This document shows, piece after piece, positions 5,625-62,657 of a stretch of 64,000 bases of DNA. The notes under the pieces are model-generated. The model worked only from the letters and a program-made list of their open reading frames with translations, was not told where the DNA came from and made no database searches. Each line of letters opens with the position of its first letter. Within the stretch, counting starts at the first letter, position 1. The position numbers and the translations under genes were made by a program. This DNA is from Dendrobates tinctorius (Eukaryota), in contig NW_027361688.1 of the NCBI RefSeq assembly GCF_039654945.1, positions 54,870,001 through 54,934,000 on the forward strand. Direction: 5' to 3'.

Positions 5625-5667
5625 ATTGGTGAACAGCGGCGCTCTGAGGCCAATATGGGAACTGCAG
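5625..5667 (-). promoter_or_regulatory. Pcdh promoter CSE (CTCF site with CGCT box) plus CCAAT box, exon 1
   Basis: Minus strand CTGCAGTTCCCATATTGGCCTCAGAGCGCCGCTGTTCACCAAT, about 200 bp upstream of the ATG. The motif recurs before every exon. Confidence 0.9.
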
Positions 5668-8523: not shown

Positions 8524-10941
8524 CTGAGAGATAAGATTTTCTGCAGGTGAAGAGTTCTGTAAACTTTCATTTACGATTCCTGGATCATCAGCATCTATTA
8601 GACTGTCCACAGGAACATTGTGTTGAGGTTTGAGGAAAGCAAATTCCCGCTCACTTGGATCCAGAGTTACACAAACATCATAGGAATATGGCAGAGGTAA
8701 TGTCCCAGGATTAAACTGGGAGATAAATCTGGGATCAATCTGTGGATATAGACTTGTACTCAAAGGCCCAAAGGAAGTATTGGATTTGGAATCTTTACAC
8801 TTAGTGACAACTGCAATAATCACAGTCAGCACAAAGAAAAAGGAAATCAGAGCCAAGGCAATTACCAAGTAGAATTGTAGGTTGGACTGTGGCTCTATTT
8901 TACCAGATTGACTGTTCAATTCAGGAAGAACTTGTTGAAAATTAAGAACTACCACAATATTAACAGTGACAGAAGTTGAAAGAGAGGGAATCCCATTGTC
9001 TTTTACTATGACCACAAGTCCATGTTTTACTGTATCTTTTTCTTGAAAAACTCTTTGGGTCCTGATCTCTCCTGTGTGCTGGTCAATTATGAAGAGTGAT
9101 GGTTCTGAAGATTGTAAAAAGTAAGACAACCAGGCATTGTGTCCAGAGTCAACATCCACTGCCACCACCTTAGATACTAAAGAGCCTTGTTCAGAGATCC
9201 AAGGAACCATCTCAAATGTTGAGCTATCAACCTCTGGTGATGGGTCTAGAATGACTGGAGAATTATCATTTTGGTCAACAACAGAAATTCTTAGCATAGT
9301 ACTGCCATTTAATGATGGAGATCCATTGTCCCTGGCAATGATTTTGATATTAAATTCCTTATGATGCTCATAATCAAATGACTGCTGTGCATAAATCACT
9401 CCAGTTACTGGATTAATAGATATGTAGTTTGACAATGGTGTTTCTTCCTTTTTTATGGTGGATATAGAATAAAATACTTTAGCGTTGTCTCCACTGTCCA
9501 TATCTTTTGCTTGAATACTGAATATTGAAGCTCCTTGTGCATTATTTTCTGGAACAAATGTTGTGTAAGTCAATTTCTCAAACATTGGAGCATTGTCATT
9601 GATGTCCGATACGTCCAGTTGGATCATTGTTCTTGAAGTCATTTCTGGAGAACCTTTATCAGAGGCTTGTACTGTGATGTTATAGGATGATATCCTTTCT
9701 CTGTCCAGATTACTTTTTGTTATAATTTTATGGAAATTACTTACTGAGGACACAACTTGAAATGGCACATCACCTATAATTAGACACTGAACTTCTCCAT
9801 TTTCTCCAGAGTCTTGATCACGAATTTCCAGTAGTGCTACAACTGTGCCCAATATGGAGTCCTCAGCAATAGGGGTCGATATTTAAGTAATGGATATCTC
9901 AGGAGCATTATCATTTTCATCTATTACTTCTATTAAAACCTTGGCATGAGCAGCGAGGCCTCCTCCATCTTTGGCTTGAACAGAAACTTCATAGTTTTTT
10001 GTCACTTCATAATCTAAAAGTTTTCTTGTTTTTATTTCTCCATTTTCAGGATTTATAATAAAAGTTTGGAGAATATTATTTGCCATTGTACTAAATGAAT
10101 ATATAATCTCTGCATTGACTCCTTCATCTTCATCACTTGCACTGACATGTAGAATTGTAGAGTTCACCGGTATATTTTCTTTCACAGATACTTTGTATAA
10201 GTTTTGAGTAAAGATAGGAACGTTGTCATTTAAATCTGTAACCAATACCATTATTTTTGTTGTCCCAGATTGTGCAGGTTTTCCACTGTCAAAAGCAGTA
10301 AGAGTGAGTTCATATTTGCTTTCTGTCTCACGATCTAAGGACTTTTCTAGAATAAGCTCTGGAAATACATTGCCATCAATGCCTGTCTCCTCTCCCAACA
10401 TAAAATGCTCATTTCTACTCAGTCTGTAGCTGATCAGAGAATTAACACCGACATCCAGATCTTCTGCTTTTTGCAAAACAAACCTTCTTCCTGGGGAGGT
10501 TGCTTCACTCAATTCTATTCTAACAGTATCATGTATAAATGTAGGAGGATTGTCATTTATATCCTGAATATCAATCTTTACATTGAATACATTTAAAGGA
10601 TTTTCAGCCACAACATCAAATGTAAGGACACAATCAACTGCAGCTTCACACAATGTCTCCCTGTCTATCCTATCAGCAACATACAGGTTTCCATTATCCA
10701 AATTTATGCTGAAATATTTCTCAGAAATCCGAGAAACAATGCGAAATTTCCGATTTGAGAGCTCCTTAACATTTAATTTAAGATCCTTTGCTAGATTTCC
10801 CACAATAGAACCTTTTCTTAATTCTTCATTAATGGAATAAGGAATCTGACCAGAGACTGAATGACACAGCCAGGAAAATAAGAAGGGAAATATTACTTGC
10901 CATCTGAGTCCTTGTTTTTTCTTCTTCCATAGCATTTTCAT
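8524..10941 (-). pseudogene. pcdhg: Protocadherin-gamma variable exon 2 with in-frame premature stop (TAA 9883-9885) after EC3; probable pseudogene
   Basis: ORFs 9883..10941 and 8425..9852 are in the same frame and read EISIT*ISTPIAEDSILGTV; paralogs have Ser at the stop. Promoter CSE is degenerate and the donor CAG|GTACCT is weak. Confidence 0.85.
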
Positions 10942-11132: not shown

Positions 11133-11176
11133 CTTGGTAAACAGTGGCACTATGAGGCCAAAGTGGGGTACTGCAG
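11133..11176 (-). promoter_or_regulatory. Degenerate Pcdh promoter CSE, exon 2
   Basis: Same position and spacing as the other CSEs, but the + strand core is CAGTGGCACT instead of CAGCGGCGCT, and CCAAT reads CCAAG. Confidence 0.85.
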
Positions 11177-12280: not shown

Positions 12281-13140
12281 ACCACTATGAGACTTTTTCT
12301 TGTCCAAATCTAAAAAATTCAAGTATCATACTTATACACAAATTTGTACCTAAATATTAATATTTACATGATTAGACTAATAAGAGGTCAGTTTGTGACA
12401 GCAGAGACTTAAGAGAGACCAGACAGTATCTGCTCTTGTTGAGAGGCTTGTAGCACTAAGAATTTCTTCATTAGGATTTCCCACATCTTTAAAAACTTTT
12501 GTATTAAAATATTGTGCTTGGCAAAGTGATTCTCATATCTCTAGATTCTACGATCATAGTTTCAAAGAGTAGGTCCCCTTTTAACCAGATTTCTGCACTC
12601 TAGATTTATAATTTACTGAATTAATAATAATTATGTATTTAATGTACTTTCATGCCATGAGAGGTAACAGGCAGTCAGAGTTATTTCCTCTTTGTTCTGT
12701 TCATCATGTATTTTTTCATGTACATTTGTTACTTATTGCTAATTAAAAGTTAAAGTACAAATTTAGTTTAAATCTCTGAAGCTATAGATTTAAACAAGAT
12801 TTAAACAAAATTTTTACTTTTAACTTTTTGTCTCTTGCATACTGTTGTGGTATAAAAAATTACTTTAGTTGGAGCACTGAAGTGTAAATCTAACGTAGAA
12901 GGTATATCAGTAACATTTACAGCATTTAGAAAAGCTCTATCCACAAGAACAATATCTACATATTATTACCAACTGTAAAATATAAAAAAATGACCAGCAA
13001 CTATAGGAGATCTCTATAGCAAAAGCTTTAAAATACAATCTGATGTATATATTTTATATTTTTTAAGCAAAGAATGAAAGTATTTATACAACTGGTAGAA
13101 ATAAGGAAAAGGGATGATGCCCAACCTCTTATATTTCTTC

Positions 13141-15298
13141 CAGCGGCGCTGGAAGAAAACAAATTCGCAAAATGACTTCACCACATTCAAACAGGCAACA
13201 CTCGATTTCAAATCTGCCCTCACCTCTGCTAAACAGGACTACTTCACAACCCTCGTATCTTCCCTATCTTACAACCCAAAACAGTTATTGAAAACTTTTA
13301 ACTTCCTCCTCCGCCCACCACTGCTTCCTCCAACCTCCCTCATCTCTGCCGATGACTTTGCCACACACTTCAAAAACAAGACTGACCAAACAAGGCAAGT
13401 CTTCATCATTCAACCACCACAACCCCTTTGTATACCAGACCAATGCCCAAACCCCATAACCTCACTCTCCAACATTACTGAAGGGGAGCTTAATCGCCTC
13501 TTCTCCAAATCGCACCTCACAACCTGTGCACTTGACCCCATCCCATCCCACCTCCTCCCCAACCTCACCACCACATTTATCCCATCCCTAACCCACCTCT
13601 TCAACCTATCACTAACGTCCGGTACCCTCCCTTCTGCTTTCAAGCAGGCCACAATCACACCTATCCTTAAAAAGCCAACCCTCAACCCAACCGCTATGTC
13701 CAGCTATCGCCCAATATCATTGCTTCCATTCGCTTCCAAACTCCTGGAACAGCATGTCCACACTGAACTTTCCTCCCACCTATCATCTAACTTGCCCTTT
13801 GACAATCTGCAATCTGGTTTCCACCCCCATCACTCTACTGAGACAGCCCTGACCAAAAATACTAACGACCTACTTACAGCCAAATCAAATGGACAATACT
13901 CTATACTCCTGCTTCTAGACCTGTCCGCTGCATTTGACACAGTTGACCACTGCCTCTTACTACAGATCCTCTCCTCCTTCGGCATCAAAGGCCTTGCCCT
14001 ATCCTGGATCTCCTCATACCTTTCCAACCGCACATTCAGCGTCTCCCACTCCCACACCACCTCCTCATCCCACCCTCTCTCTGTTGGAGTCCCCCAAGGC
14101 TCTGTTTTAGGACCCCTACTCTTCTCAATCTATACACTTCGTCTGGGGCAACTCATAAAGTCCCACGGATTCCACTACCACCTTTATGCTGATGACACTC
14201 AGATCTACCTCTCTGGCCCAGAAGTCACCTCTCTGCTGTCCAGAATCCCAGAGTGTCTATCAGCCATATCCTCCTTCTTCTCCTCTCGCTTCCTCAAACT
14301 CAATGTAGACAAATCTGAACTCATCATCTTTCCTCCATCTCACAGACCTTCTTTACCCGACCTAGCTATAACAATTAATGACATCACACTTTCCCCAGTA
14401 CCAGAAGTCCACTGCCTCGGAGTAACCTTTGATTCTGCCCTGTCCTTCAAACCGCACATCCAAGCTCTTTCTACCTCCTGTCGCCTCCAGCTCAAAAATA
14501 TTTCCAGAATGCGTCCTTTCCTCAACCCTCAATCTACTAAAATGCTTGTGCCTGCCCTCATCATCTCCCGCCTCGACTACTGCAACATCCTTTTCTGTGG
14601 TCTCCCTGCTAATACCCTCGCACCTCTCCAGTCCATCCTTAACTCTGCCGCCCGACTAATTCATCTCTCTCCTCGCTACTCCTCCGCTTCTCCCCTCTGC
14701 AAATCTCTTCACTGGCTCCCATTCCATCAGCATATCCAGTTCAAATTACTAATTCTGACCTACAAGGCCATCTGTAACCTGTCTCCCCATATGTCTCTGA
14801 ACTAATCTCCCGATACCTTCCCTCACGTAATCTCCGGTCCTCCCAAGACCTCCTTCTCTCCTCCACACTTATTCGCTCCTCACCCAACCACCTCCAAGAC
14901 TTCTCCCGAATAGCTCCTATTCTCTGGAATTCTTTGCCCCAACAAGTCCGACTATCAACCACATTTGGATCCTTCAGACGGAACCTGAAAACCCACCTCT
15001 TCAAGAAAGCCTACAGCCTGCAATGACCCTGCTACCTCCTTCTCTCTCACCACTACCAGTGATATCACCTCAACCAACACCGGAACTGCTGCAACCCACC
15101 AACCTACTGTCTCCTTCCCCACCATCCTGTAGCATGTAAGCCCGAAAGGGCAGGGTCCTCTCTCCCCTCTGTATCAGTCTGTCATTGTTAGTTTGTTTAC
15201 TGTAAGTGATATCTGTAATTTGTATGTAACCCCTTCTCATGTACAGCACCATGGAATCAATGGTGCTATATAAATAAATAATAATGATAATAATAATA
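13141..15298 (+). mobile_element. 5'-truncated L2/CR1-group LINE with a largely intact reverse transcriptase frame
   Basis: ORF 13114..14805 has [37 protein letters not shown] and YADDTQ. It frameshifts near 14790, lacks the endonuclease and ends in a (TAA)n tail at 15270-15298. Confidence 0.92.
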
Positions 15299-17339: not shown

Positions 17340-19260
17340 GGGTTTCCACTGTTTAGGTACATCCGGGGGTCTCCAAACGCGACATGGCACCACCATTTAT
17401 TCCAGCCAATTTTGCGTTTAAAAATTCAAACAGTGCTCCCTCCATTCCGAGCCCCGATGTGTGCCCAAACAGTGGTTTACCCCCACATATTGGGTATCAG
17501 CATACTCAGGAAAAATTGCACAACAACTATTGGGGTCTAATTTCTCCTGTTACAATTGGAAAAATAAAAAATTGGGGGCTAAAATAATTTTTGTGGAAAA
17601 AAATGATTTTTTATTTTCACGGCTCTGCGTTATAAACTTCTGTGAAGCACTTGGGGGTTCGAAGTGCTCACCAGACATCTAGATAAGTTCCTTGGGGGGT
17701 CTAGTTTCCAAAATGGGGTCACTTGTGGGGGTTTCTACTGTTTAGACACATCAGGGGCTCTGCAAACGTAACATGATGCCTGCAGACCATTCCATGAAGT
17801 CGGCATTTTAAAACGTCACTACTTCCCTTCCGAGCCCCGACATGTGCCCAAACAGTGGTTCCCCCCACATATGGGGTACCAGCTTACTCAGGACAAACTG
17901 TACAACAACTTTTAGGGCCCAATCTATCCTGTTACCCTTGTGAAAATAAAAAATTGTGGGCTAAAAAATCATTTTTTGAGAAAAAAATATTTTTTATTTT
18001 CATGCTTTTGCGTTATAAACTTCTGTGAAGAACTCGGGGGTTAAAATTACTCACACATCTAGATTAGTTCCTTTGGTGGTCTAGTTTCCAAAATGGGGTC
18101 ACTTGTGGGGGGTTTCCACTGTTTAGGCACATTAGGGGCTCTGCAAATGTAACATGATGCCCGCAGACCATTCCATCAAGTTGACATTTCAAAACGTCAC
18201 TACTTCCCTTCCGAGCCCCCACGTGTGCCCAAACAGTGGTCCCCCCACATATGGGGTACCAGCATACTCAGGAGAAACTGGACAACAACTTTAGGAGTCC
18301 AATTTTTCCTGTTACCATTGTGAAAATAAAAATTAGCGGGCTAAAAAATCATTTTTTGAGGAAAAAAATATTTTTATTTTCACAGCTCTGCGTTATAAAC
18401 TTCTGTGAAGCACTTGGGGGTTCAAAGTGCTCACCACACATCTAGATAAGTTTCTTTGGGGGTCTAGTTTCCAAAATGGGGTCACTTGTGGGGGAGCTCC
18501 AATGTTTAGCACACAGGGGCTCTCCAAACGTGATATGGTGTTCGCTAACGATTGGAGCTAATTTTCCATTCAAAAAGTCAAATGGCACTCCTTCCCTTCC
18601 GGGCCCTGCCATGCGTCCAAACTGTGGTTTATGACCACATATGAGGTATTGGTGTACTCAGGAGAAATTGCCCAACACATTTTAGGATCCATTTTACCCT
18701 GTTGCCCATGTGAAAATGAAAAAACTGAGTCTAAAAGAAAATTTTTGTGAAAAAAGTACTTTTTTTTTTAAGGATCAATTTGTGAAGCACCTGGGGGTTC
18801 AAAGTACTCACTATGCATCTAGATAAGTTCCCTGGAGGGTCTAGTTTCCAAAATGGGGTCACTTGTGCGGAGCTCCAATGTTTAGGCACACAGGGACTCT
18901 ACAAATGCGGCATGGCAATGCTAAATATTCCAGCATATTTTCCATTCAAAAAGTCAAATGGCGCTCCTTCCCTTCTGAGCCCTGCCGTGTGCCCAAACAG
19001 TGGTTTATGACCACATATGAGGTATCGGTGTACTCAGAAGAAATTGCCCAAAAAATTTTAGGATCCATTTTATCCTATTACCCATGTGAAAATGAAATAA
19101 ATGATGCTAAAAGAAAATTTTTGTTGGAAAAATTAAAATGTCCATTTTTTCCTTCCATGTTGCTTTAGTCCCTGTGAAGTACCTGAAGGGTTAATAATCT
19201 TCTTGAATATAGTTTTGAGTAGCTTGAAGGGTGCAGTTTTTAGAATGGTGTCACTTTTGG
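17340..19260. repeat. About 380-bp tandem repeat, roughly 5 diverged copies, inside the piggyBac-like element
   Basis: Anchor ctagtttccaaaatggggtcacttgtg at 17701, 18081, 18463 and 18841, with a degenerate copy near 19240. Confidence 0.85.
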
Positions 19261-21191
19261 TCATTTTCTGCCATATAGACCCCTCAAAGTGACTTCAAAT
19301 GTGAGGTGGTCCCTAAAAAAAGGTTTTGTAAATTTTGTTGTAAAAATGAGAAATCGCTGGTCAACTTTTAACCCTTATAACTTCATAGCAAAAAGTTTTG
19401 TTTGCAAAATTGTGCTGATCTAAAGTTGACATGTGGGAAATGTTATTTATTAACTATTTTGTGTCACATAACTGGTTTAACAGAATAAAAATTAAAAATT
19501 TGAAAATTGTGACATTTTCAAAATTTTCTCCAAAGTTCCATTTTTTCACAAATAAACGCAAAAATTATCGACCTCAATTTACCATTAATATGAAGCCCAA
19601 TATGTCATGAAAAAACAATCTCAGAATCGCTAGGATGCGTTGAAGCGTTCCTGAGTTATTACCTCATAAAGGGACACTGGTCAGAAATGCAAAAAATGGC
19701 CAGGTCATTAAGGTCAAAATAGGCTGGGTCATGAATGGGTTAAATAATACAACATATTTAAACTGTATTAAAAGAAAACTGTAATGCCTTTCATTATCAC
19801 ACAAATATGTGCATAAGATTTACTACATATAATTGTCTTTTCTATCCCTTTATCACAAAGAAAATCAATTTTGCAAGTTAGTTTAGCCACAAGAGCTGTA
19901 ATCTGAAATATAATTTTCTGCAAATTATTACTGTTCCTGATTGTGCATCCAAAATTAACTATTAACATCTTTCATTATAATATAAAATGTAAATAAAAAA
20001 ATATAAGATTTACAAAACAGAAAGATTCGATTACAGAATATAAATCTTTATAAGAATATAGACATATTAACTCAAGAAGTGATCACAGGAGACAACATTT
20101 CCCCAACAATAACCTCGCTTAATTTCATTGCAAAGCCTAATAAATAAGTGTGATTGTGAGCCCTTCCATGAGTAGGCTTCCTGCCAAATCTAAATCCCTC
20201 AATGACAAACATGTATCATTGGATCACCATGAGCTCTAAACCTGCCCAAAACAGACAATGAACTTCGCAATAAATGTTTTAGTCTCTCTTAAAATGTTCT
20301 GTGCTATAGTCATTTCCATTTCAATGGTGTTTTGCATTTTCTACATTGACTATTTACATATAGAATTATCCGGATGCCACAAAGCGTTTATTAATCTAAG
20401 GACACTTAACTGATGATTTAGTTTTGTCACAGAAACTACAGTATAATAGATTAGTGGGCTGATTCATCAGGACTGGCAGAGTTTATGCTCGTGCTACACC
20501 AGTCTTACTGGAGAACAAGGCACCAAATTCATTGAGGCACATAACACAGTAAATTCAGCACCTCTTCTAAGCCGTATGCACCTACTTGCTCTGCACCAGA
20601 AATGCTACTCCTGTCAACACCTGGAGTAGCTCTTCTGACGTATAAAACTCATTGTTCACCAGCTCTTCACATCTGTCCATTTTGGTGAAGCCCATTAAAA
20701 TTGGCGTGAAAATTCAAAAAGTTGCCAAACTCTTCATTGTGCAAAAATTTTGCAAATTTCATGGTTTTCACACCAGTTTTCTGGCATAAAAGTTTTGATG
20801 AAATTCCCCTAAGTTTTTAAAACTATTTAAAAAATCTGCAGGATGTGCTACAACTTTTTAAATTATTTTAATGTGACCTTTAAAAGGCAAAATCTGTAGC
20901 AAACTCAGCAAAATGTGCAACAAAATCCACATATAACATGATGCAAACAATTTTAGTGGCAAAATAGTCAGCTACTTTATACAGTTTGCTTTTTCATCCA
21001 TACAACGTGCCATTCTTTGATATGTCTTGTATTGCATCTTAGATCATTCTGCTACTATGGAAAATAACAACTTTACTACAGCAGATAGCAATTTGGTGTT
21101 GAAACCAACACTTGGTTGTTATTGGCTAATCAATAAAACAATAAGTTTACAACATATGATTTTGAGCTCCCATCATATTTTTTGCACTCAC

Positions 21192-23853: not shown

Positions 23854-23898
23854 ATTGGTTAAACAGCGGCGCTCAGAGGTGAAAGTGAGGAACTGCAG
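23854..23898 (-). promoter_or_regulatory. Pcdh promoter CSE plus CCAAT box, exon 3
   Basis: + strand attggttaaacagcggcgctcagaggtgaaagtgaggaactgcag. Confidence 0.9.
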
Positions 23899-34315: not shown

Positions 34316-34360
34316 ATTGGTTAAACAGCGGCGCTCAGAGGTGAAAGTGAAGAACTGCAG
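34316..34360 (-). promoter_or_regulatory. Pcdh promoter CSE plus CCAAT box, exon 4
   Basis: + strand attggttaaacagcggcgctcagaggtgaaagtgaagaactgcag. Confidence 0.9.
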
Positions 34361-38887: not shown

Positions 38888-39135
38888 TTACTCTGGGAAA
38901 CTCCAGGTCATTCTGGGAGATTTGGCAAATATTTGGTTACTGAATCTGGCAGATTTTACACACAAGAATGTGAATAATGTATCAAAAATAATTTATCTTC
39001 TCCATCTGGACAGTAAAATTATTGAATATATATTTGGAAGAGCAACAAGCTAAAGGAAATACTATATATCTCAATACTTAGATAAATAAAACTACTCAGC
39101 ATTGAATGTAGAAAATCTCATCCGGTTTCACTTAC

Positions 39136-41556
39136 CCCTGTAGGGTTACTCGCAGGCAAATTGTTTTGTAGGCTTTCATTCCCGAGTTCAGAATCTTCAG
39201 CATCAATGAGATTAGCCACAGGGACACAGGGATTTGGTTTCATGTAAGTAAAGTCATTTTCACTGGATTCCAGAGCCACACAGACATTATATGAATAAGG
39301 CAAAGTCATTGATCCATTTGTGTACTGAGAAATCAAACTGGGATCAACATAAGGATATAGGTTTGAACTTAGACCATCCAATACTGGGGGTGGTGAAGGC
39401 TTCTTGCATTTTGATATAACGACCAACATAAAAGTTATTATGAACAAAAGCGAAATGAGTGCAAGAGAAATGACTAAGTATAACTGCAAATTGGACTGAG
39501 GGTCTTCATTACTGATTTTATCATTGAATCTGGGAACCACTTGCTCAAAATTGTTGGCAACAATGAGATTTAAGGTAACTGTGGATGAGAGCGAGGGGTG
39601 TCCATTGTCCTTCACCATCACTATGATCTTATGATTCAATACATCCCTTTCTTGAAAGATATGTGATGTCCTTATTTCTCCAGTATGCTGACTGATGGCA
39701 AAATAAGAATGTTCTGATTCTTGTAAAAAGTGATAAGAGAGCCAAGAATTATGTCCAGAGTCTATGTCTATGGCCACCACCTTGGTAATTAAAGAACCTT
39801 GTTCACAGTCAAAAGGGACCATTTCAAATGCAGCCGTACCTCCACTATCTATCGAGGGATATAAGATTTTTGGTGAATTATCATTTTGGTCTACTATGTG
39901 GATAATTAATGTAGCATTGCTGCTCAAAGATGGCGATCCATTGTCTTTAGCAGTGATATGTATCAGAAACTCTGATCGCTTCTCATAATCAAATGATCTT
40001 TGAGCATAGAGAACTCCAGTCTCTATATTTATAGAAAGGTAAGAAGAAGATGTCTGGTCTTCTGTCACATTGCTGGAAATTGAGTAAATTATTTTGGCAT
40101 TGTCTCCAGTATCAGGATCTGATGCTTGTATACTGAATACTGATGCTCCTGGTAAATTATTTTCTTGCACGTAGGTATAAAAGATGGATTTAGAAAACAA
40201 TGGTAGATTATCATTGACATCTGATATCTCCAGGATTATGGATATTTTACTAGACAGTGGTGGAAATCCTCTATCAGTTGCCAGAATAGTGATATTATAC
40301 CTAGATACTTTTTCTCTGTCCATGGGGGCAGCAGTGACAACTTTGTAATAAGTATTAGAGGATGATATCAAACTAAAAGGTGTTTCTTCCAACAATTTGC
40401 AGTCCGTTTCTCCATTTTCTTCCGAATCACGATCATGGACTTTAATAAGAGCTATCATTGCACCAGGTGAAGTATCCTCAGCTACGGGACTCAATAATGA
40501 ATTAACTGATATCTCAGGAGCATTGTCATTCTCATCTATAGCTTCTATCAGTACTTTACAATGGGCCATGAGGCCTCCGCCATCCTTTGCTTGGACAGAT
40601 ATTTCATAATTTTTTGCTAATTCATAATCTAATTTATCATTTACTTTTATTTCCCCAGACACAGGGTGGATACTGAATGTTCCAGAACGATGAACATTTC
40701 CTGATGTTTTACTAAAGGAATATGTGATCTGTCCATTGGCCCCTTCATCCTTGTCTGTGGCATTCACTGTGATTACTATGGTATTTATTGGTGTATTCTC
40801 ATATACACTGACTTTATATACTGACTGGGTAAATATTGGGAAGTTATCATTAGCATCAGTAACAATGACCCTTATTAAGGCAGTTCCAGATCTCACAGGT
40901 TTGCCTCCATCCATTGCTGTTAATATAAGCTCATGGAGACTATGCGTCTCCCTATCTAATGGCTTCTCTAGAACAAGCTCTAGAAATGTACTACCATCTG
41001 GGTTTCTGTCTTCACTCAGTGTAAAATACTGATTATCACTGAGCTTATATGTCTGCACAGAGTTAGAACCAATATCTGGATCTTCTGCCGTCTGTAAAGC
41101 AAACCTGGTCCCTGCTGATGTTAATTCAATTGTCTCTACAGAAAGCATGTCAGGGAAGAATGCAGGAGAATTATCATTTATATCCTGGATCTCTATTTTT
41201 ATTTGAAAAATATTGAATGGATTTTCAACCACCGCATCAAAGGTCAAGAAACATGAATCCTCTGTCCTACACAATGATTCTCTATCTATCCTGTCCTTCA
41301 CATGCAGATTTCCATTATCCAAATTTACATAAAAATATTTTTCTGAAACATGTGACAAAATCCTCAACTTTCTAGATGAGAGCTGCTTCATGTCTAATCC
41401 AAGGTCATCTGCAATATTTGCTATAACAGAGTCTTTCCTCATTTCTTCTACAATGGAATAATGAATCTGACCGGAGACTGAATGACACAGCCAAGAAAAT
41501 AAGATAGAAATTGTTACTTGCCATCTGACTGCTTTCCAGATCTGTGGAGGTTCCAT
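39136..41556 (-). CDS. pcdhg: Protocadherin-gamma variable exon 5
   Basis: ORF 39118..41634; first ATG at 41556 (MEPPQIWKAVRWQV). Donor GGG|GTAAGT at 39136/39135. Confidence 0.95.
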
Positions 41557-41779
41557 GTCTTTCCTTTCTGTCTTAAATCTGATATTTAGATAGCAAAATG
41601 TATAATCCACTGAAGAAGAAAATGTATAAATCAATCCCCTGTTTTCTTAAAATAACATTCAATATCCAGTATTTTTCATAGAGAAAATCCAGAATCTGTC
41701 TGTGTCTTTGCTTGCAGTTGTGTATTGTGTGTGAATGATGAAACTACCAGTGGATCTATAGTTCTGTTTTCTGCTCCTT

Positions 41780-41824
41780 TTTGGTCAAACAGCGGCGCTC
41801 AGAGGCGTAAGTAAGGAACTGCAG
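41780..41824 (-). promoter_or_regulatory. Pcdh promoter CSE, exon 5
   Basis: + strand tttggtcaaacagcggcgctcagaggcgtaagtaaggaactgcag. Confidence 0.9.
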
Positions 41825-44506: not shown

Positions 44507-46624
44507 CCCCTTTCCGACATCGGGAGTAATAATATGTCGATGTCGGACTCCCTCCCTTTGATGTGGGCTCCAGCGGTGAACTCACATCGTTCTTGGGACA
44601 TGTCAGCTGTTTTGAACACCTGACAGGTGCCCGCAATAGCCGCAGGTGGAATCACGATCCACCGGCAGCTATTAACTAGTTAAATACTGCTGTCAAACGC
44701 TGACAGCGGCATTTAAATGGGGCTTCTGGCAATCGCACCAGAAATACGCACACCATTGGCCAGCATCACATGATCGCGGGTCACTGGTGTGTCGGCATGG
44801 TAATCTGAGTTCTCCTGGAGACCTCTATGGCTGTTAGTGCCAGATTGCTGTGAGTGCCACCCAGTGGTCGACGCTCGTAGCAAGTCAGCAATTCTACTAC
44901 ATAGAGACAATGGTCAGATTTGGCTATGGCAGCTTCTTGTCTCCTATGGAGACTATTGAAGCATGCTAAAAGTTATAGAAAAATATTTTTAAAAATTAAA
45001 AAAATAAAAATATAAAAGTTCAAATCAACCCCCGTTCACCCCATTCAAAATTAAACAATAAAAATAAAATCAAATATACACATATTTGGTATCACCGCAT
45101 TCAGAATTGCCCGATCTATCAATCAAAAAAGTAACCCAATTGCTGAATGTTGTAGTGAGAAAAAAATTCAAAATGCCAGAATTACATTTTTTTGGTCACC
45201 GTGACATTGCATTAAAACGTAATAACGGGCAATCGAAAGATCATGTCTGCACCAAAATAGTATCATTCAAAACACCAGCCTGGCACACAAAAAAATGCCC
45301 TCACCAAACCCGAGATCATGAAGAATGGAGATTGTTATGAATGAGTCACCGAGGAGGAATAAACAAAAAGCAAGCTAAGCCCTGAAAACCGGAGAGGTTG
45401 GTAACTAGCGGATTGCAGACCCCTGATCCTATCCACAACAACTAGCAGTAGCCGTGGAGCGTGCCTACTGTGGTCCTAGACGCCTCGTCATGGCCGGAGA
45501 ACTAAATAAGCCTAAAGAAAGGGAAAATCTAAACTGCCCTAGAGCAGACCCCAAAGCAATAGACAGCCCCCAACATGTATTGTCTGTGAAACAAGATGAA
45601 AACACAGACACAGAAAGATAGGCTGAGCAAACGATGGGGCACTCACTAACTAGAAAGGACAGGAAAGAAAAGCTGCTGTCTGCAATCATGTAAAAAACCC
45701 TGCCAAAAAAAATGTCCAACACATCTGATTGAAAAAGGCCCTGAAGTCGCTAGACTTCAAATCACTATATCAGCTCCCAGGTATATTCTGAAGACAGAGC
45801 AAAAGAGATCAACTGATCAGAGACAAAATGGGGATTCAGCCCAGTCCCAGCCAGGGCTGGCTGAACACAAAAACTAAGTAAACCAGACAAAACTCATATG
45901 AACAATAGCAGAGAAAACTTAGCTTTAGGAAGGCAGGAACCAAACTGGAAACCAGAAGCCACAGTCAGGAAAAATCACCAGCAAGAAACTAGGGAGTCGG
46001 CTGACTTAAATACAATCAGAAACTCCTGATGACCAATCGCAGTCCTCTTCCTCAGGTGGCCGGTCTCTGCCATTTAGATCAGCTTCATTACCTCCCTTCA
46101 CCAACAGAGGGAGTCCAGATAGAGAACTCACTACTCCTCTGTCAGCACAGCCAGCTCCATAATCCTCACCAGAAGCCAGAGGCAAAACCGAAAATGAGCT
46201 CACAACAGGAGATGCTACGGGTATCGGAAATTGATGCAATTTTTTTTAGCAAACTTTGGAATTTTTTTTCACCACTTAGATAAAAAAGAACCTAGACATG
46301 TTTGGTGTCTGTGAACTCGCAATGACCTGGAGAATCATAATGGCAGGTCAGTTTTAGCATTTAGTGAAACGAGCAAAAAAGCCAAACAAAAAGTAAGTGT
46401 GGGATTGGACTTTTTTTTGCAATTTCACCGCACTTGGAATTTTTTTTACCATTTTCTAGTACATGACATGGTAAAACCAATGGTGTCACTCTAACGTACA
46501 ACTTGTCCCACAAAAAATAAGCCCTCACATGCTCATATTGATGGGAAAAAATTATGGCTCTGGGAAGGAAGGGAGCAGAAAACAAAAATGCAAAAAAACA
46601 AAAAAAGCTCCTGGGGTTAAGGAG
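44507..46624. mobile_element. Non-autonomous piggyBac-like element interrupted by a solo LTR
   Basis: TTAA|CCCCTT at the left end and AAGGAG|TTAA at the right end. Confidence 0.65.
45333..46207. mobile_element. Solo LTR (875 bp)
   Basis: Termini TGTTATGA...TCACAACA; direct repeat GGAGAT at 45327-45332 and 46208-46213. Confidence 0.75.
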
Positions 46625-48278
46625 TTAAAGAAGACCTATAACCACATGAAATTTATCCAGTATTTACTTTTATTTTTTCTCCCCTAAGTATGACATTTTT
46701 TGCTTTTCTTAAGGGGTATTCCCATCTCCAAGATCTTAATCCCAATATGTAGTAGGTGTATTAATAATATTAGCAAATATCTTCAATTAGAAATGTAATA
46801 TAGTTTTTCTTATTTGTTATGTCTCTTTATTCATTGACAGGCATTGCAAGACCATAGGTATCCATCATTTTGAGTTTTATGACCATTAGCAACTAACTAA
46901 CAAACTGTCACTTTATTAGTGGAAGTAACCGTGGATAGCTAAGGTCCTGCAATGCCTGCACATGAGGAAAGAGATATAGCGAATAAAAAAACTATACTGC
47001 CAGTTTATCCAGAACCATAAGGTGGATTTTAAAAAACAGAAACCAGAAAACTCAGGGGAACCATGGAAATAATATGAGAGCAAAATCTAGACGTTTAATC
47101 TTGTGACAGGTCTTTTCAAATGTGTAATACAGTATGTAATACACATTTACATTTGAGAGATATCTAAGTAAATATATTTCTATATATTTTTAAATATGCT
47201 ATTGATATGAAATCTCACCAGATGTCAGCAACCCATTCAATTCACACAGGAAAAGAAATCAACCCAAAGATATCCATAAATTAAGCTATATGTTATAATG
47301 AGAAATGACACAGGGAAAAAGTATTAAACATATGAAGAAAAAGATGTAAAAAGCCATGGAAAGTCATAAAACATGATGAAATCTATCAATAATAAGAAAG
47401 TAATTCTGTCACATACTAAAAAAATATAAGGTGGTTCAACTGATGGCCCATAAAGCTTCCTTATTACCAAGGTGCCACAAAAAAATCATCTCATGATGGG
47501 TAAAGCCAGTGAGCTGTCTCATGACCTTCACAACCTTATTGTTGCTAGTAAAACATACTAATAGCATTGGTTACAGAAGAATTTTTAAACTACTAAAGGT
47601 TCCAGTGAGCACTGTTGGGGCTATAATCTGAGAGTGAAAAGAACATAATTTCACCATAAACCGCCATAACCAGGTGCTCCTTGCAAGATTTCAGACAGAG
47701 GAGTAAAAACAATTTTCAGAAGAGTGGTCCAAGGGCCAAGGACCACTTAAAGAAAGCTAAAGAAACATCTGGAATCAGTAAGTACAATAGTTGTGGGGGC
47801 TTCCTTTTTATCCCCATTGGCACCCTGAAATCATGACTGTGTGGTCCTGTTTGCCATGGCAATTCAAGAACAAATAGCGGCCTTAGAGTCTGATGGCTGT
47901 TGTAACCTGTTCAGAAGTTAGCAGCATTTCGGTGGTAAAAATACACATTTTCATTTCTGTCATGCCACTTTGCATTAATTCCTGAAAATCACCTGAAGGG
48001 TTAATAAACTACGTGACTGCATTTTTCGATATGTCAGGGGGTGCTGTTTTTAAAGTGGCATAACTTTTGGGGGTTTTCCAATATATAGGACCCCAAAGGC
48101 CCTTCAAACCTGGATAGGTCCCTAAAAACATAAATTTTGTAAATTTCCTTGATAAAATGACGAGAGCCAACAGCTCGAAACACCGTGTCTGCAAATTGAG
48201 ATTCTGATTTGGCTTGTATCCTAAGTCATACTACAAGACTCGTTAAAGGGTTGATTGTGACTTGTAGGATCGCTTCTA

Positions 48279-48294
48279 CCAATAGGTGGCGCTG
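48279..48294 (+). promoter_or_regulatory. Candidate CTCF motif inside the retrozyme monomer (second copy at 48610-48625)
   Basis: CCAATAGGTGGCGCTG is close to the CTCF core consensus CCASYAGRKGGCRC. Confidence 0.6.
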
Positions 48295-48462
48295 TAGAGT
48301 AAAAGTCCTCTTTCTTTCTGAAGAGGCAATTTGCATATTATTTTCCCAGAGGAGCATTGCACGGCGAATAAGTCTCCTTACCTTGACAAGCCACAGCTGG
48401 CATGTCACTCTCCGCAAGGAGAAACCTTACTTCTTAGACCCTAGTCCAGAGCCTCTCACCTT

Positions 48463-48544
48463 GCCAAATCAGATCTCATACTTTGCACTGACGAGAGCCA
48501 ACAGCTCGAAACACCGTGTCTGCAAATTGAGATTCTGATTTGGC
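48463..48544 (+). ncRNA. Type I hammerhead ribozyme (predicted cleavage after GUC at 48520)
   Basis: TTTGCA-CTGACGA-GAGC(CAACA)GCTC-GAA-ACA(CCG)TGT-C-TGCAAA. Stem I extends via TCTCA/TGAGA and GCCAAATCAGA/TCTGATTTGGC. Confidence 0.9.
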
Positions 48545-49469
48545 TTGTATCCTAAGTCATACTACAAGACTCGTTAAAGGGTTGATTGTGACTTGTAGGA
48601 TCGCTTCTACCAATAGGTGGCGCTGTAGAGTAAAAGTCCTCTTTCTTTCTGAAGAGGCAATTTGCACTTGATAAAATGAAAAATTACTGCTACATTTTTA
48701 ATCCTCCTAAAATGATAACAAAATAAAAGAACATTTTACAAATCGTGCTGATGTAAAGCAGGCATGTGGAAAATGTTATTTATGAATGCTTTTCTGTGGT
48801 ATGACTGTCTGGATTAAAGGGATAATCATTTAAAGTTTGAAAATAGCTAATTTTTTAACATTTCTCTCAAATTTCTGATATTTTTTATAAATAAAAACAA
48901 AACATATTGACCTAAATTTACCATTATAATAAAGTACAATGTGTCACGAAAAAACATTCTCAAAATCACTGGGATTTGTTGAAGCGTTCCAGAGTTATTA
49001 CCGTATAAATTGACACTGGTCAGATTTAAAAAATGTGGCTCTGTCACTAAGGGGTTAAAAGAAAACTATGAGTAATGCACTCAACTTCCATGACCTGTAT
49101 GCACGTTCACCACACAAGACTCCATTGCTGAACAAAAAGCATGTTCATGCACATTTAAAATTTGTTCAACAACATTTAGACAAGCATATGGGAGAATACT
49201 GGAAAAATACAATACTGTTTTTTCAGATGAGACCAAAATTGAACCATTTGGATGCCATAATACACACCAAGTTTGGAATACAAAAGACACTGCATATCAC
49301 CATGCAACACCATATCAACAGTTAAGTTTGGAGGTAGGAACGTCATGGTTTTGGCCTTTTTTCAGTAAACGACATTGGCAAACTTTATATTATTGAAGGA
49401 ATGGCCAAATGTACCAACATATTCTTGAAAAATGTCTGATGCCATCTACCAGGATGATGTAGATGAAAT

Positions 49470-51516: not shown

Positions 51517-52551
51517 ATGAAATGAGGGTGGACATTTCAGCAAGACAATTATCCCAAACACACAGTTAGGGAAACTCACAATTAGTTTCAGAAAAGAAAA
51601 TAAAGTTGCTAAAATGGCCCAACCAATCACCTTGCCTGGACCCAATAAAATATTAATTGAAGGAACTAAAGCTAACAGTTGATAGAAGAAGCTCACTGAA
51701 CCTTCAGAATTTGAAGAGTTTTTGTGTAGAAGAATGAGACAAAATTACACCTGACCAATGCATGCGACTAGTTTCTCTATACTGGAGCCGTCTTTACCTT
51801 CACTGCAAATTTATATTCACTGAAATTATCTTTTCTCTTAGCCAATCCAGAAAAACACTCTAATTATGTCACTTCCTAGAAAAACACAATGGTATTCTAA
51901 TATTACTGAAGAAAAAAGAGACATAGAACACACAACCAAAAATCATACATTAATCTACTGCAAAAAATAAATGGAAATTCTTAGTTAACATACTCTTACA
52001 AGCACTATGATGAAATAAAAGCATGGTCTTGATGTAACAGCACAACATGATAAACAGCAGACGTGAAAATTCATATTATTTTAGATACAAGTAGCTACTG
52101 TGTGCTATTGCAATTACTCCAGCTTTCTGTTGATCATATGACAAACTGCATTTTATGTGAATACTGTATATTTAAAGTCATTGCTTCTTTCAAATAATCT
52201 TCGTGGGTCCCACCAGGCCAAAACAGACCAGCCTAAAGTAACTTCCAGTTTTTTTCCTACATTTTCTAGATTCTGAAACAAGTGAGATTGCAAACCTATG
52301 CTTCAATGTCTTAAACATTAAAAATCATTCCATTATTCCAGAAATAATAGAAAGCACGTAAGTGCCACAGTAGGTTGTGCTATGGTTGTCAGATCATCAG
52401 ATTTTAGTCTTCACATTTTGGTGCATACGGTATATTAAAAACATATGGCAGATCCTATCAGTGGCTTTAGCTTAGAACATTGTTTATTTAGAAGGCTCAT
52501 TATGCCTTCTGAATATCACAAAGCTTTTAGTTTCATCCTTAATTAACTAAC

Positions 52552-54975
52552 CTGTGGTGGATCTGAGGTTGGTAAAGCTTCTTTCACATTTTCACTTGTA
52601 GGTCCAGGATCATCAGCGTCAATGAGCTTATCCACAGGAACATCTTGATTTGGTTTCATATAAGTAAAGTCACTTTCACTGGCATCAAAGCCAACACAGA
52701 CATTGTAGGAGTAAGGAAAAGGTAATGTTCCATTCTCATAGTGAGAAAGGATTCTGGGATCAACTGGAGGATATAAATTGGAGCTGAGGTTACTGAACAT
52801 TGGTACGGGTTCTGATTTCTTGCACTTTGAGATAATGGCCAACATCACAGTGATAATAAAGAGCAGTGAAATTAATCCAAGGAAGATGATTAAGTAAAAC
52901 TGTAAATTAGATTGTGGATTTTCTTCCGTTCTTTCCTCATGGAACTTGGGAAACATCGGTTGTAAGTTGTTTGCAATAATGAGATTTAGGGTAACGGTAG
53001 ATGAGAGAGAGGGGTGTCCATTGTCCTTCACCATCACCACGATCTTATGATTCAATACATCCTTCTCTAGAAAAATACGAGATGTTCTTATTTCTCCAGT
53101 ATGTTGAGTAATGGCAAAATAAGAAGGCTCTGATAGTTGTAGAAAATGGTAAGAGAGCCAAGAATTGTGTCCAGAGTCCGGGTCTATGGCCACCACCTTA
53201 GTTATCAAGGACCCTTGTTCAGAATCAAAAGGGACCATTTCATATGCAGTCACACCTCCACTGTCTGCTGATGGGTATAATATTTTTGGTGCATTATCGT
53301 TCTGATCCACAATACGGATAAGCAATGTTGTGTTGCTGCTCAGAGGTGGAGATCCATTGTCTCTGGCATTTATTTGTATGTAAAACTCTTTTTGTTGTTC
53401 ATAATCAAATGATCTCTGGGCATATATGACCCCAGTCTCTATATTGATGGAGAGGTAGGAGGTTGCTGTGAGTTCTTCTATATCAGCAGTGTAGATGGAA
53501 TAAAATATTTTTGCATTGTCTCCAGTATCAGGATCTGAGGCTTGTATGCTGTATATGGAAGACCCTGGTAAATTGTTCTCCGGGACATATACAATATAAG
53601 TAGTTCTGATAAACATTGGAGGGTTGTCATTGACATCTGATACCTCCAGAGTGATGGTTCTTCTGCTGGAAAGTGGAGGAGATCCTCTGTCAGTGACTAA
53701 AATAGTAATGTTATAACTAGAAACCTTCTCTCTGTCCAAAGAACTTGTGGTAACAATTCTGTAATAATTGTCAGATGATAGCACTAAATTAAATGGCATT
53801 TCTTCCAAAAGTTTACAGTCCACCTCTCCATTCTGTCCTGAGTCTTTATCATGAACTTCAATCAGAGAGATCATTGTACCCAGAGCCGAATCCTCAGGAA
53901 TTGGAGAAGACAATGATGTGAGCGATATCTCAGGAACATTGTCATTCTCATCCATAACTTCTATCAATACTTTACAATGGGCTACAAGACCTCCTCCATC
54001 TTTTGCTTGTACAGAGAGCTCATAAATTTTAGTTAGTTCGAAATCTAACTTATCATTTGCTTTAATATCTCCGGATATGGAGTGAATGCTGAATGTTCCT
54101 GTATGATGGACATTTCTAGATGTTTTACTAAAGGAATACATGATCTGTCCATTGACCCCTTCATCCTTGTCTGTGGCATTCACTGTGATTATTGTGGTAT
54201 TTATTGGTGTATTCTCATTTACACTTACTTTATATACTGACTGGGTGAATATTGGGAAGTTATCATTAATGTCAGCAACAATAACCCTTATTAAGGCAGT
54301 TCCAGATCTCACAGGTTTGCCTCCATCCATAGCTGTTAATATAAGCTCATGAAGACTCTGTGTCTCCCTATCTAATGGTTTCTCTTGGATAAGCTCTAGA
54401 GACCTACTACCATCTGGATTTCTGTCTTCACTCAGTGTAAAATACTGATTATCACTGAGCTTATATGTCTGCACAGAGTTAGAGCCAATATCTGGATCTT
54501 CTGCCGTCTGTAAAGCAAACCTGGTCCCTGCTGATGTTAATTCAATAGTCTCTACAGAAAACATGTCAGGGAAGAATGCAGGAGAATTATCATTTATATC
54601 CTGAATTTCTACCTTTGTCTTAACAATATTGAATGGATTTTCAACCACAGCATCAAAGGTTAGGTAGCAAGAAGCTGCACTGCCACATAATGTCTCCCTG
54701 TCTATCTTGTCCTTAATATAAAGATTTCCACTGTCAGGATTTACATAGAAATATCTCTCTGCTGATCTGGATACAATCCTCAGTTTTCTAGATGAGAGCT
54801 CCTTAACATCTAATCCAAGGTCATCTGCAATATTTGCTATAACAGAGTCTTTCCTCATTTCTTCTACAATGGAATAATGAATCTGACTGGAGACTGAATG
54901 ACACAGCCAAGAAAATAAGATAGAAAATGTTACTTGCCATCTGAGTCCTTTGTATTTTTCTGTATAAGGTTTCAT
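52552..54975 (-). CDS. pcdhg: Protocadherin-gamma variable exon 6
   Basis: Intact 810-aa ORF. Donor CAG|GTTAGT at 52552/52551. Confidence 0.95.
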
Positions 54976-55180: not shown

Positions 55181-55225
55181 ATTAGGCAAACAGCGGCGCT
55201 CTGAGGTGAAACTGAGGAACTGCAG
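55181..55225 (-). promoter_or_regulatory. Pcdh promoter CSE, exon 6
   Basis: + strand attaggcaaacagcggcgctctgaggtgaaactgaggaactgcag. Confidence 0.9.
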
Positions 55226-62612: not shown

Positions 62613-62657
62613 CTTGATTAAACAGCGGCGCTCTGAGGAGAAATTGAGGAACTGCAG
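62613..62657 (-). promoter_or_regulatory. Pcdh promoter CSE, exon 7
   Basis: + strand cttgattaaacagcggcgctctgaggagaaattgaggaactgcag. Confidence 0.9.

What the first reader, a model, noticed from the sequence alone, without database searches (positions are those of the whole stretch)
48279..48625. The retrozyme delivers two tandem CTCF motifs oriented opposite to all Pcdh promoter CSEs
Seen: CCAATAGGTGGCGCTG on the + strand at 48279-48294 and 48610-48625, whereas all seven promoter CSEs read on the minus strand. Known: clustered Pcdh promoter choice depends on CTCF-site orientation and cohesin loop extrusion towards downstream enhancers. Inference: these sites are convergent with the promoters of exons 6, 7 and any further upstream, and lie between them and the expected downstream constant region. 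They could act as a new loop anchor or insulator that biases isoform choice, linking a ribozyme retroelement to neuronal identity coding.
Basis: partly seen in the sequence, partly recalled or inferred. Interest (0 to 1): 0.75.

Follow-up and report, generated by a model that had tools for sequence, protein, structure and literature searches.

The report
Retrozyme-borne CTCF-like sites in protocadherin cluster
A recently inserted, non-coding "retrozyme" repeat between two frog protocadherin exons carries two copies of a strong match to the CTCF docking sequence. They point the opposite way to the gene promoters, but every copy of this very abundant repeat has the same motif and nothing yet shows that CTCF binds here.

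Summary
CCAATAGGTGGCGCTG occurs exactly twice, on the + strand, at 48279 and 48610. With its flanks it scores 20.3 of 30.8 bits on the vertebrate CTCF core matrix (p about 9e-8; 0.012 hits expected per window).

The two copies are one event. The motif lies in the 178-nt part of a 331-nt hammerhead retrozyme unit that this 1.5-unit insertion holds twice. The insertion is young: its repeats are 100% identical, it has a 13-bp target duplication, and an empty paralogous site lies at about 19.3 kb.

The orientation claim also holds, but not for the reason given. The promoter CSE core is nearly palindromic and scores 2 bits or less on either strand. All seven promoters do carry the CTCF upstream motif CTGCAGTNCC on the minus strand, at the canonical distance from that core.

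The motif belongs to the repeat family as a whole. Contigs of two species keep it, and other notes of this scan report it at other loci, so the scan has seen it before on other DNA.

Published insertions of reverse-oriented CTCF sites into mammalian Pcdhα make the insulator idea coherent. Binding, methylation and any effect remain untested. Most likely this is a passenger motif. I put a real effect on isoform choice at roughly 10-15%.

The parts
48161..48666 (+). Retrozyme insertion: about 1.54 copies of a 331-nt non-coding hammerhead unit. The first three bases before it (48158-48160, TGA) could belong to either the element or the target.
   Evidence: Direct repeats 48158-48335 and 48489-48666, 100% identical, spacing 331. 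Hammerhead hit. Contigs skip exactly 519 nt here.
48148..48160 (.). Left copy of the 13-bp target-site duplication CTTGATAAAATGA.
   Evidence: Read. Joints 48147->48667 with 13 letters fitting both sides in runs X1, X5, X9 and X16. Alignment with the uninterrupted paralog.
48667..48679 (.). Right copy of the 13-bp target-site duplication.
48276..48294 (+). CpG of the CGCT box at 48290-48291.
   Evidence: PWM 20.3/30.8 bits, p=9e-8. No CTGCAGTNCC upstream motif beside it.
48607..48625 (+). CTCF-core-like 19-mer, copy 2, identical to copy 1.
48482..48526 (+). The only complete type I hammerhead ribozyme. Its short, near-palindromic helix III is of the amphibian type.
   Evidence: Rfam RF00163, 34.7 bits, E=6e-5, full-length model match.
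48158..48195 (+). 5'-truncated hammerhead copy. It lacks the 5' strand of helix I because the insertion starts inside CTGACGAG.
   Evidence: Repeat register, sequence, no Rfam hit.
48329..48366 (+). Octamer ATTTGCAT followed by a TTCCCAGA..GCATTGC stretch that resembles an SPH/Staf site. This is a possible snRNA-type distal promoter element of the retrozyme.
   Evidence: Sequence read. The resemblance is from my own knowledge of snRNA promoters and of newt satellite 2, and was not tested.
55192..55225 (-). Exon 6 promoter element: upstream motif CTGCAGTTCC, 9-nt spacer, then CSE core with CGCT box. It is convergent with the retrozyme motifs, 6.6 kb away.
62624..62657 (-). Exon 7 promoter element, same architecture. 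Convergent with the retrozyme motifs, 14 kb away.
41791..41824 (-). Exon 5 promoter element, same architecture. Divergent from the retrozyme motifs, 6.5 kb away.
34327..34360 (-). Exon 4 promoter element (upstream motif with one mismatch, CTGCAGTTCT).
23865..23898 (-). Exon 3 promoter element.
11143..11176 (-). Exon 2 promoter element. Both CpGs of the core are mutated (AGTGGCACT). The exon itself is interrupted.
5635..5667 (-). Exon 1 promoter element (spacer one nucleotide shorter).
44852..44870 (-). The only other strong CTCF-core match in the window (20.8 bits). It is gene-sense ('forward') oriented and lies between the exon 5 promoter and the retrozyme. Together with the retrozyme sites it gives a divergent reverse-forward arrangement.
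   Evidence: No paralog in the window.
19119..19685 (+). Paralogous copy of the host repeat without the retrozyme, i.e. a paralogous empty site.
   Evidence: blastn at 71-77% identity to both flanks. Alignment runs uninterrupted across the insertion point.

Best explanation
A young retrotransposed copy of an abundant frog hammerhead retrozyme (satellite-2-like, 331-nt unit, 1.54 units) landed inside an older repeat. The site is 6.5 kb upstream of the promoter of protocadherin variable exon 5 and 3.9 kb downstream of exon 6. Every unit of this family contains one strong match to the CTCF core motif. In the RNA the same bases fold as a small hairpin (CUACC/AAUA/GGUGG). Because the motif lies in the part of the unit that this insertion holds twice, the locus gained two co-oriented CTCF-type cores 331 bp apart. 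They sit on the strand opposite to the seven promoter CTCF-type elements. Shown: the anatomy, the motif strength, the orientation, the family-wide presence and the recent insertion. Inferred: this copy is most likely a passenger. As in other high-copy repeats that carry CTCF motifs, most copies are expected to be silenced (CpG methylation of the CGCT box, heterochromatin). The expected effect on protocadherin promoter choice is therefore small or none. If the sites were occupied, they would act as reverse-oriented loop anchors that compete with the downstream enhancers for promoters 6, 7 and those further upstream.
For: Retrozyme anatomy. Target duplication and empty paralogs. Motif strength. 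Family-wide motif: thousands of contig pieces of organism A and of a second species B cover the element. Among the 40 best-supported differences shown (183 not shown), the only one inside the motif is T>C at 48614, which keeps or improves the CTCF match to 21.4 bits. Six other notes of this scan report the same pairing at other loci (unchecked notes). RNA hairpin and stable fold of the unit, z=-3.7. Silencing expectation: SINE B2 CTCF motifs are restrained by H3K9me3 (PMC9067402), and methylation of the CpG in the CGCT box precludes CTCF binding at Pcdh promoters (PMC7811963). The retrozyme motif has that CpG at 48290-48291. Core-only sites without the upstream motif can bind poorly (PMC11417384), and the retrozyme site has no upstream motif.
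Against: At p about 1e-7 the core is as good as many occupied vertebrate sites. It is far better than the promoter cores, which are the presumed natural CTCF sites here. The copy is young and its motif intact. Retrozymes are transcribed in amphibian tissues (PMC7229834), so some copies sit in open chromatin. Ectopic reverse sites do insulate in Pcdhα. I have no methylation, ChIP or Hi-C data for this frog, so 'passenger' is a prior and not a result.
Confidence: 0.62

Rival explanations
1. The two retrozyme-borne sites are occupied by CTCF in neurons and stall cohesin coming from the upstream (higher-coordinate) side. They form loops with the convergent promoters of exons 6, 7 and beyond, and so act as a new insulator or decoy anchor that lowers those isoforms' access to the downstream enhancers and biases isoform choice.
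For: Strong core match, twice, co-oriented. Opposite orientation to all seven promoter elements. Position between promoters 6-7 and exons 1-5. Reverse-oriented sites inserted in human Pcdhα compete with the enhancer and insulate, and tandem sites strengthen the effect (bioRxiv 10.1101/525543). Frog domain borders show convergent CTCF motifs (PMC8270788). A forward-oriented strong motif at 44852 gives a boundary-like divergent pair.
Against: No occupancy data. The motif is shared by a very high-copy family, most copies of which cannot all be functional anchors. There is a CpG in the CGCT box and no upstream motif. The frog enhancer layout is unknown and outside the window. It is not known whether the insertion is fixed or polymorphic.
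Confidence: 0.13
2. The motif is kept because it serves the retrozyme itself. It may act as an RNA structural hairpin of the circular or linear RNA, or as a DNA element of the unit's own snRNA-type promoter, possibly even recruiting CTCF to keep source copies open. Its landing in the protocadherin cluster would then be incidental.
For: The motif folds as a 5-bp hairpin within a unit RNA that is more stable than its shuffles (z=-3.7). The common family variant T>C falls in the hairpin loop. An octamer and an SPH-like stretch lie 35-70 nt downstream. The motif is kept in two species. Hammerhead elements of unrelated organisms lack any such motif, so it is specific to this family.
Against: The two species' family copies differ from this copy at roughly 2-3% of listed positions, so an unchanged 16-mer is expected by chance. 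No covariation test was possible, because no other copies could be fetched as sequence. The promoter reading rests on recalled consensus sequences.
Confidence: 0.2
3. The match is a pure chance resemblance with no meaning for either the element or the host.
For: Many repeat families and many transcription-factor motifs were implicitly scanned. The CTCF core is partly self-complementary and GC-rich, and the unit is GC-richer (45%) than the window (38%).
Against: 6e-5 hits are expected per unit. This does not exclude chance origin followed by amplification, which overlaps with the best explanation.
Confidence: 0.05

Closest known systems
CTCF motifs dispersed by retrotransposons, e.g. rodent SINE B2 (PMC9067402, PMC5880236, PMC6979391)
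   Same: A non-autonomous, high-copy retroelement whose consensus contains a CTCF core motif, so every new insertion delivers an oriented candidate site. Use of such sites is restrained by heterochromatin.
   Different: The carrier is a hammerhead retrozyme (satellite-2-like, circular-RNA-forming), not a tRNA-derived SINE. No paper in the library links retrozymes with CTCF. Binding has not been shown for any copy.
Metazoan or amphibian hammerhead retrozymes and newt/salamander satellite 2 (PMC7229834)
   Same: Type I hammerhead with weak helix III, unit of about 330 nt, head-to-tail partial multimer, non-coding, very abundant.
   Different: This is a dispersed 1.5-unit copy with a 13-bp target duplication in a frog gene cluster. 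The CTCF-like motif is not described in that paper.
Engineered reverse-oriented CTCF sites inserted in the human Pcdhα cluster (bioRxiv 10.1101/525543)
   Same: Position (inside the variable region, between promoters and downstream enhancers) and orientation (opposite to the promoter sites). The predicted consequence is competition with the enhancer for upstream promoters.
   Different: Those sites were verified by ChIP-seq, 4C and RNA-seq in a human cell line. Here there is only sequence, in a frog gamma-type cluster whose enhancers are unknown.
Clustered protocadherin promoter CSE/SSE elements (PMC3333863, PMC4978886, PMC7811963)
   Same: The frog promoters have the CGCT-box CSE 100-250 bp upstream of the start codon, preceded by a second required element at fixed spacing.
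   Different: In this window the 'specific' upstream part is a shared, perfect CTCF upstream motif. The core is degenerate (2 bits or less on the core matrix), so it is much weaker than the retrozyme's core.

Membership tests
Vertebrate CTCF-binding site | Match to the 15-19 bp core motif (JASPAR MA0139.1) | tested here: met
   20.3 of 30.8 bits, p=9e-8. The only weak position is A at matrix position 7.
Vertebrate CTCF-binding site | Upstream motif TGCAGTNCC 8-9 nt before the core (present at a minority of sites, strengthens binding) | tested here: not met
   No match upstream of either retrozyme core. This feature is optional: about 15% of sites have it (PMC11417384).
Vertebrate CTCF-binding site | CTCF and cohesin occupancy in vivo | not testable with these tools
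   No ChIP or CUT&Tag data are reachable. The listed runs were contigs of DNA or of uncertain kind.
Vertebrate CTCF-binding site | Unmethylated CpG in the CGCT box | not testable with these tools
   CpGs at 48290-48291 and 48621-48622. No bisulfite data. The unit's CpG observed/expected ratio is 0.53 against 0.33 for the window, which fits a young copy but does not decide the question.
Hammerhead retrozyme (metazoan, non-LTR type) | Type I hammerhead ribozyme in each unit | tested here: met
   RF00163, 34.7 bits (gathering score 34), full-length match. The second copy is truncated by the insertion start.
Hammerhead retrozyme (metazoan, non-LTR type) | Short (170-400 nt) non-coding unit in head-to-tail copies | tested here: met
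   331-nt spacing, 1.54 units. The only ORFs are mechanical TTG-start ones of 109 aa or less.
Hammerhead retrozyme (metazoan, non-LTR type) | Dispersed insertion with a target-site duplication; many copies in the genome | tested here: met
   13-bp duplication and empty paralogs. More than 13,000 contig pieces were laid on the 1-kb stretch (retrozyme plus its repetitive flanks) in one run.
Hammerhead retrozyme (metazoan, non-LTR type) | Expression as linear and circular RNA | tested here: inconclusive
   Runs guessed to be RNA from a second species hold the element at high depth, but the kind is a guess and no unit-length circular joint was listed.
Clustered protocadherin promoter CTCF site (CSE), forward oriented | Conserved element with CGCT box about 200 bp upstream of each variable exon's start codon | tested here: met
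   Seven elements, 101-250 bp upstream, with 47 invariant columns in the alignment. The exons are cadherin-repeat proteins with Cadherin_2 and Cadherin_C_2 domains.
Clustered protocadherin promoter CTCF site (CSE), forward oriented | Recognisable, oriented CTCF motif | tested here: inconclusive
   The core matrix gives 2 bits or less on either strand, and the core is near-palindromic. A perfect upstream motif on the sense strand at canonical spacing in 7 of 7 promoters does set the orientation.
Repeat family that disperses CTCF sites (SINE B2-like) | Motif is part of the family consensus, not private to one copy | tested here: met
   Contigs of two species keep it; T>C is the only listed variant inside it. 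The supporting notes of the scan are unchecked.
Repeat family that disperses CTCF sites (SINE B2-like) | A measurable share of genomic CTCF peaks lies in the family | not testable with these tools
   No ChIP data for this or a related frog could be queried.

The most novel reading that the evidence does not exclude
An abundant frog hammerhead retrozyme family is a genome-wide disperser of functional, oriented CTCF sites, an amphibian counterpart of rodent SINE B2. On this reading the young copy is an occupied reverse-oriented anchor inside the protocadherin cluster that lowers enhancer access of exons 6 and upward. A ribozyme-bearing retroelement would then rewire neuronal identity coding and could create heritable differences between individuals that carry or lack the insertion.
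Probability: 0.1. Interest if true: 0.75.

Novelty: new member of a known kind. Interest (0 to 1): 0.4.

Why it matters
Protocadherin isoform choice is the best-understood case where the orientation and position of CTCF sites decide which promoter fires. Engineered reverse sites in the mammalian cluster change that choice. A natural, recent, datable insertion of two such sites would be a ready-made experiment in a non-mammal.

More generally, if this very abundant retrozyme family carries a usable CTCF site in every unit, it would be a major and so far undescribed source of chromatin-boundary turnover in frogs.

As it stands, the sequence facts are solid and the functional claim is only a prior. 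The useful by-product is the finding on the promoters. The frog promoter elements are bipartite CTCF-type sites with a perfect upstream motif and a degenerate core. That explains the old SSE-plus-CSE spacing requirement and fixes their orientation.

Tried and rejected
1. Orienting the promoter CSEs with the core matrix. This failed: all seven score 2 bits or less at the CSE itself on both strands. No hit above about 10 bits lies within -1000/+500 of any start codon. I replaced it with the upstream-motif test.

2. Fetching other retrozyme copies from public metagenome contigs with a hammerhead-core pattern. The 17 loci found (L001-L017) share only the ribozyme core with this element. They belong to unrelated hammerhead repeats and have no CTCF-like motif.

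3. Looking for an allelic empty site in sequencing runs. The flanks are themselves a high-copy repeat. The precise 519-nt skips also appear in the second species, so they come from paralogs. Polymorphism remains undecided.

4. Looking for circular-RNA joints. Only contigs were available, the RNA status of the runs is a guess, and no unit-length back-joint was listed.

5. Similarity look-up of the motif region in the scan's own index returned nothing.

6. Wu et al. 2001 and Guo et al. 2012 are not held in the library, so the mammalian CSE sequence could not be compared directly.

7. Other readings of the 19-mer (YY1 site, Pol III A box, CCAAT box) were considered by eye only. Each misses key positions, and I dropped them.

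Full report
**What is there**

The 16-mer CCAATAGGTGGCGCTG occurs exactly twice in the 64-kb window, both times on the + strand, at 48279-48294 and 48610-48625. No other match turns up even with three mismatches allowed. Both copies lie in two 100% identical 178-nt direct repeats, 48158-48335 and 48489-48666, whose starts are 331 nt apart.

Rfam finds one complete type I hammerhead ribozyme at 48482-48526 on the + strand (RF00163, 34.7 bits). The first repeat begins inside the CTGACGAG box, so its hammerhead is truncated. The element is therefore about 1.54 head-to-tail copies of a 331-nt non-coding unit. It has only mechanical TTG-start ORFs. This is the anatomy of the metazoan and amphibian retrozymes, or satellite-2-like repeats, described in PMC7229834.

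**A real and recent insertion**

The insertion is flanked by a 13-bp target duplication, CTTGATAAAATGA, at 48148-48160 and 48667-48679. Its flanks belong to an older repeat. A diverged copy of that repeat at 19119-19685 runs uninterrupted across the insertion point.

Contigs from four public runs, including a second species, join 48147 to 48667 with 13 letters that fit both sides. Because the flanks are repetitive and the second species shows the joint too, these are paralogous empty sites, not an empty allele. Whether the insertion is polymorphic stays open. The perfect identity of the two repeats and of the duplication shows the insertion is recent.

**How good the CTCF match is**

That is a weakness. 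Its column sums (908-913) look right, and it gives 24-30 bits to the three designed CTCF sites printed in PMC11194110.

- The 19-mer at 48276-48294 and 48607-48625 scores 20.3 of a possible 30.8 bits. Only one position is poor, an A at matrix position 7.
- The exact p-value is 9e-8, so 0.012 such hits are expected in the window and 6e-5 in one unit.
- Only one other site in the window is comparable: 44852-44870 on the minus strand, at 20.8 bits.
- The retrozyme site has no CTCF upstream motif.
- Its CGCT box contains a CpG at 48290-48291. That is the position whose methylation is reported to preclude CTCF binding at protocadherin promoters (PMC7811963).

**The gene context**

Seven long ORFs lie on the minus strand. 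One of them, exon 2, is interrupted. The two I scanned are typical clustered-protocadherin variable exons, with Cadherin_2, five cadherin repeats and Cadherin_C_2.

The insertion lies between exon 5 (39118-41634) and exon 6 (52543-54975). It is 6.5 kb from the exon 5 promoter element, 6.6 kb from the exon 6 element and 14 kb from the exon 7 element.

An alignment of the seven upstream regions shows a conserved block of about 60 nt, 100-250 bp before each start codon. This is the CSE.

**The orientation claim**

The CSE core alone does not show this. It reads AGCGCCGCT on one strand and AGCGGCGCT on the other, which is nearly a palindrome. It scores 2 bits or less on the core matrix on either strand, and no promoter has any hit above about 10 bits.

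The conserved block does, however, begin with CTGCAGTTCC. This is the CTCF upstream motif: the sites quoted in PMC11194110 start with TGCAGT[T/A]CC, 8 nt before the core.

- Exact CTGCAGTNCC occurs six times in the window, all on the minus strand and all in these promoters. The seventh promoter has one mismatch.
- The best, weak core alignment starts 14-15 nt after TGCAGT, against 14 nt in the published sites.

The frog promoter elements are therefore bipartite CTCF-type sites, with a perfect upstream motif and a degenerate core, oriented with the genes. This fits the old finding that an element just upstream of the CSE, at fixed spacing, is needed for CTCF binding (PMC3333863).

The retrozyme motifs point the opposite way. 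They are convergent with promoters 6 and 7 and divergent from promoters 1-5.

**Is the motif special to this copy?**

No. When contigs of public runs are laid on the stretch, the retrozyme part is covered by thousands of pieces from the same species and from a second species. Among the 40 best-supported differences listed (183 not shown), the only one inside the 16-mer is T>C at 48614. That change raises the CTCF score to 21.4 bits.

Six other first-reader notes of this scan report a CTCF-like site in retrozyme copies at other loci of the same genome. Those notes are unchecked, but they concern independent DNA. According to the scan's notes the genome is a poison frog; I did not verify the species.

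Hammerhead repeats fetched from metagenomes are unrelated and lack the motif. The motif is therefore a property of this frog family, not of hammerhead elements in general.

In the unit RNA, cut at the ribozyme site, the motif forms a 5-bp hairpin (CUACC, loop AAUA, GGUGG). The whole unit folds better than its shuffles (z=-3.7). The common T>C variant falls in the loop. An octamer ATTTGCAT and an SPH-like stretch follow 35-70 nt downstream. From my own knowledge, they recall the snRNA-type promoter reported for newt satellite 2.

**How it most likely works**

If CTCF bound these two sites, its cohesin-blocking side would face the higher coordinates, that is, upstream in gene terms. The sites would then pair with the convergent promoter elements of exons 6, 7 and beyond, and compete with the downstream enhancers.

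This is what was seen when reverse-oriented sites were inserted into the human Pcdhα cluster. They looped to promoters, competed with the enhancer and acted as insulators, and tandem sites acted more strongly (bioRxiv 10.1101/525543). Frog domain borders also show convergent CTCF motifs (PMC8270788). The inference is coherent.

Several points count against it:
- The motif rides on a very high-copy family.
- In the best-studied parallel, rodent SINE B2, use of such motifs is held down by H3K9me3 (PMC9067402).
- The site has a methylatable CpG in the CGCT box and lacks the upstream motif. In one reporter study, removing that motif almost abolished binding (PMC11417384).
- No occupancy, methylation or contact data could be reached.

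I therefore hold the passenger reading at about 0.6 and the functional-insulator reading at about 0.13. A reading in which the motif serves the retrozyme itself (RNA hairpin or promoter element) gets about 0.2. That last reading is compatible with either of the other two at this locus.

**Novelty**

Repeat families that spread CTCF motifs are well known. A hammerhead retrozyme as the carrier is not in the searchable literature: no paper holds both words. I class it as a new member of a known kind. The scan has already noted the same motif in this family at other loci.

Noticed in passing
window 5635-5667, 11143-11176, 23865-23898, 34327-34360, 41791-41824, 55192-55225, 62624-62657 (minus strand): Each protocadherin promoter carries a perfect CTCF upstream motif (CTGCAGTNCC), a 9-nt spacer and then a degenerate, near-palindromic CSE core. 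The frog 'SSE-CSE' therefore looks like a bipartite CTCF site whose strength rests on the upstream motif and not on the core.
   Followed up: yes
window 44852-44870 (minus strand): A strong, gene-sense CTCF core match (20.8 bits, p=6e-8) in a GC-richer stretch between the exon 5 promoter and the retrozyme. With the retrozyme sites it forms a divergent, boundary-like pair. Whether it lies in a repeat is unknown; it has no paralog in the window.
   Followed up: partly
window 8425-10941 and 11143-11151: Exon 2 is split into two ORFs (475 and 352 aa). Its CSE core has lost both CpGs (AGTGGCACT), as expected for a dead, methylated promoter. Another reader noted this too.
   Followed up: partly
window 13114-14805 (+): A 563-aa ORF with a reverse transcriptase domain (RVT_1, E=4e-37) between exons 2 and 3, antisense to the cluster. 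It is a non-LTR-type retroelement of the kind that could supply the enzyme for retrozyme insertion.
   Followed up: partly
window 47900-48157, 48667-49024 and 19119-19685: The retrozyme landed inside an older, very high-copy repeat that is also present in a second species. A 71-77% identical copy lies between exons 2 and 3. A Tc1-like transposase remnant seems to follow from about 49040.
   Followed up: partly
window 48158-48666 (+): The hammerhead strand is antisense to the protocadherin genes, so the ribozyme is not part of the long pre-mRNAs that start at exons 6 and upward. If the unit's own promoter-like motifs (octamer at 48329-48336 and SPH-like stretch) are active, they would drive antisense transcription towards exon 6. 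In mammals, antisense transcription through a promoter is linked to promoter choice.
   Followed up: no
window 48209-48538 (+): A mechanical TTG-start ORF of 109 aa spans almost exactly one 331-nt unit. It is probably meaningless, since 331 is not a multiple of 3.
   Followed up: no
L001-L017 (metagenome contigs): Several metagenome contigs hold near-identical type I hammerheads (GCACTGCACTGATGAGGGCCAACAGCCCGAAAC...) with longer helix III. These are presumably invertebrate-type retrozymes of host or environmental eukaryotic DNA.
   Followed up: partly
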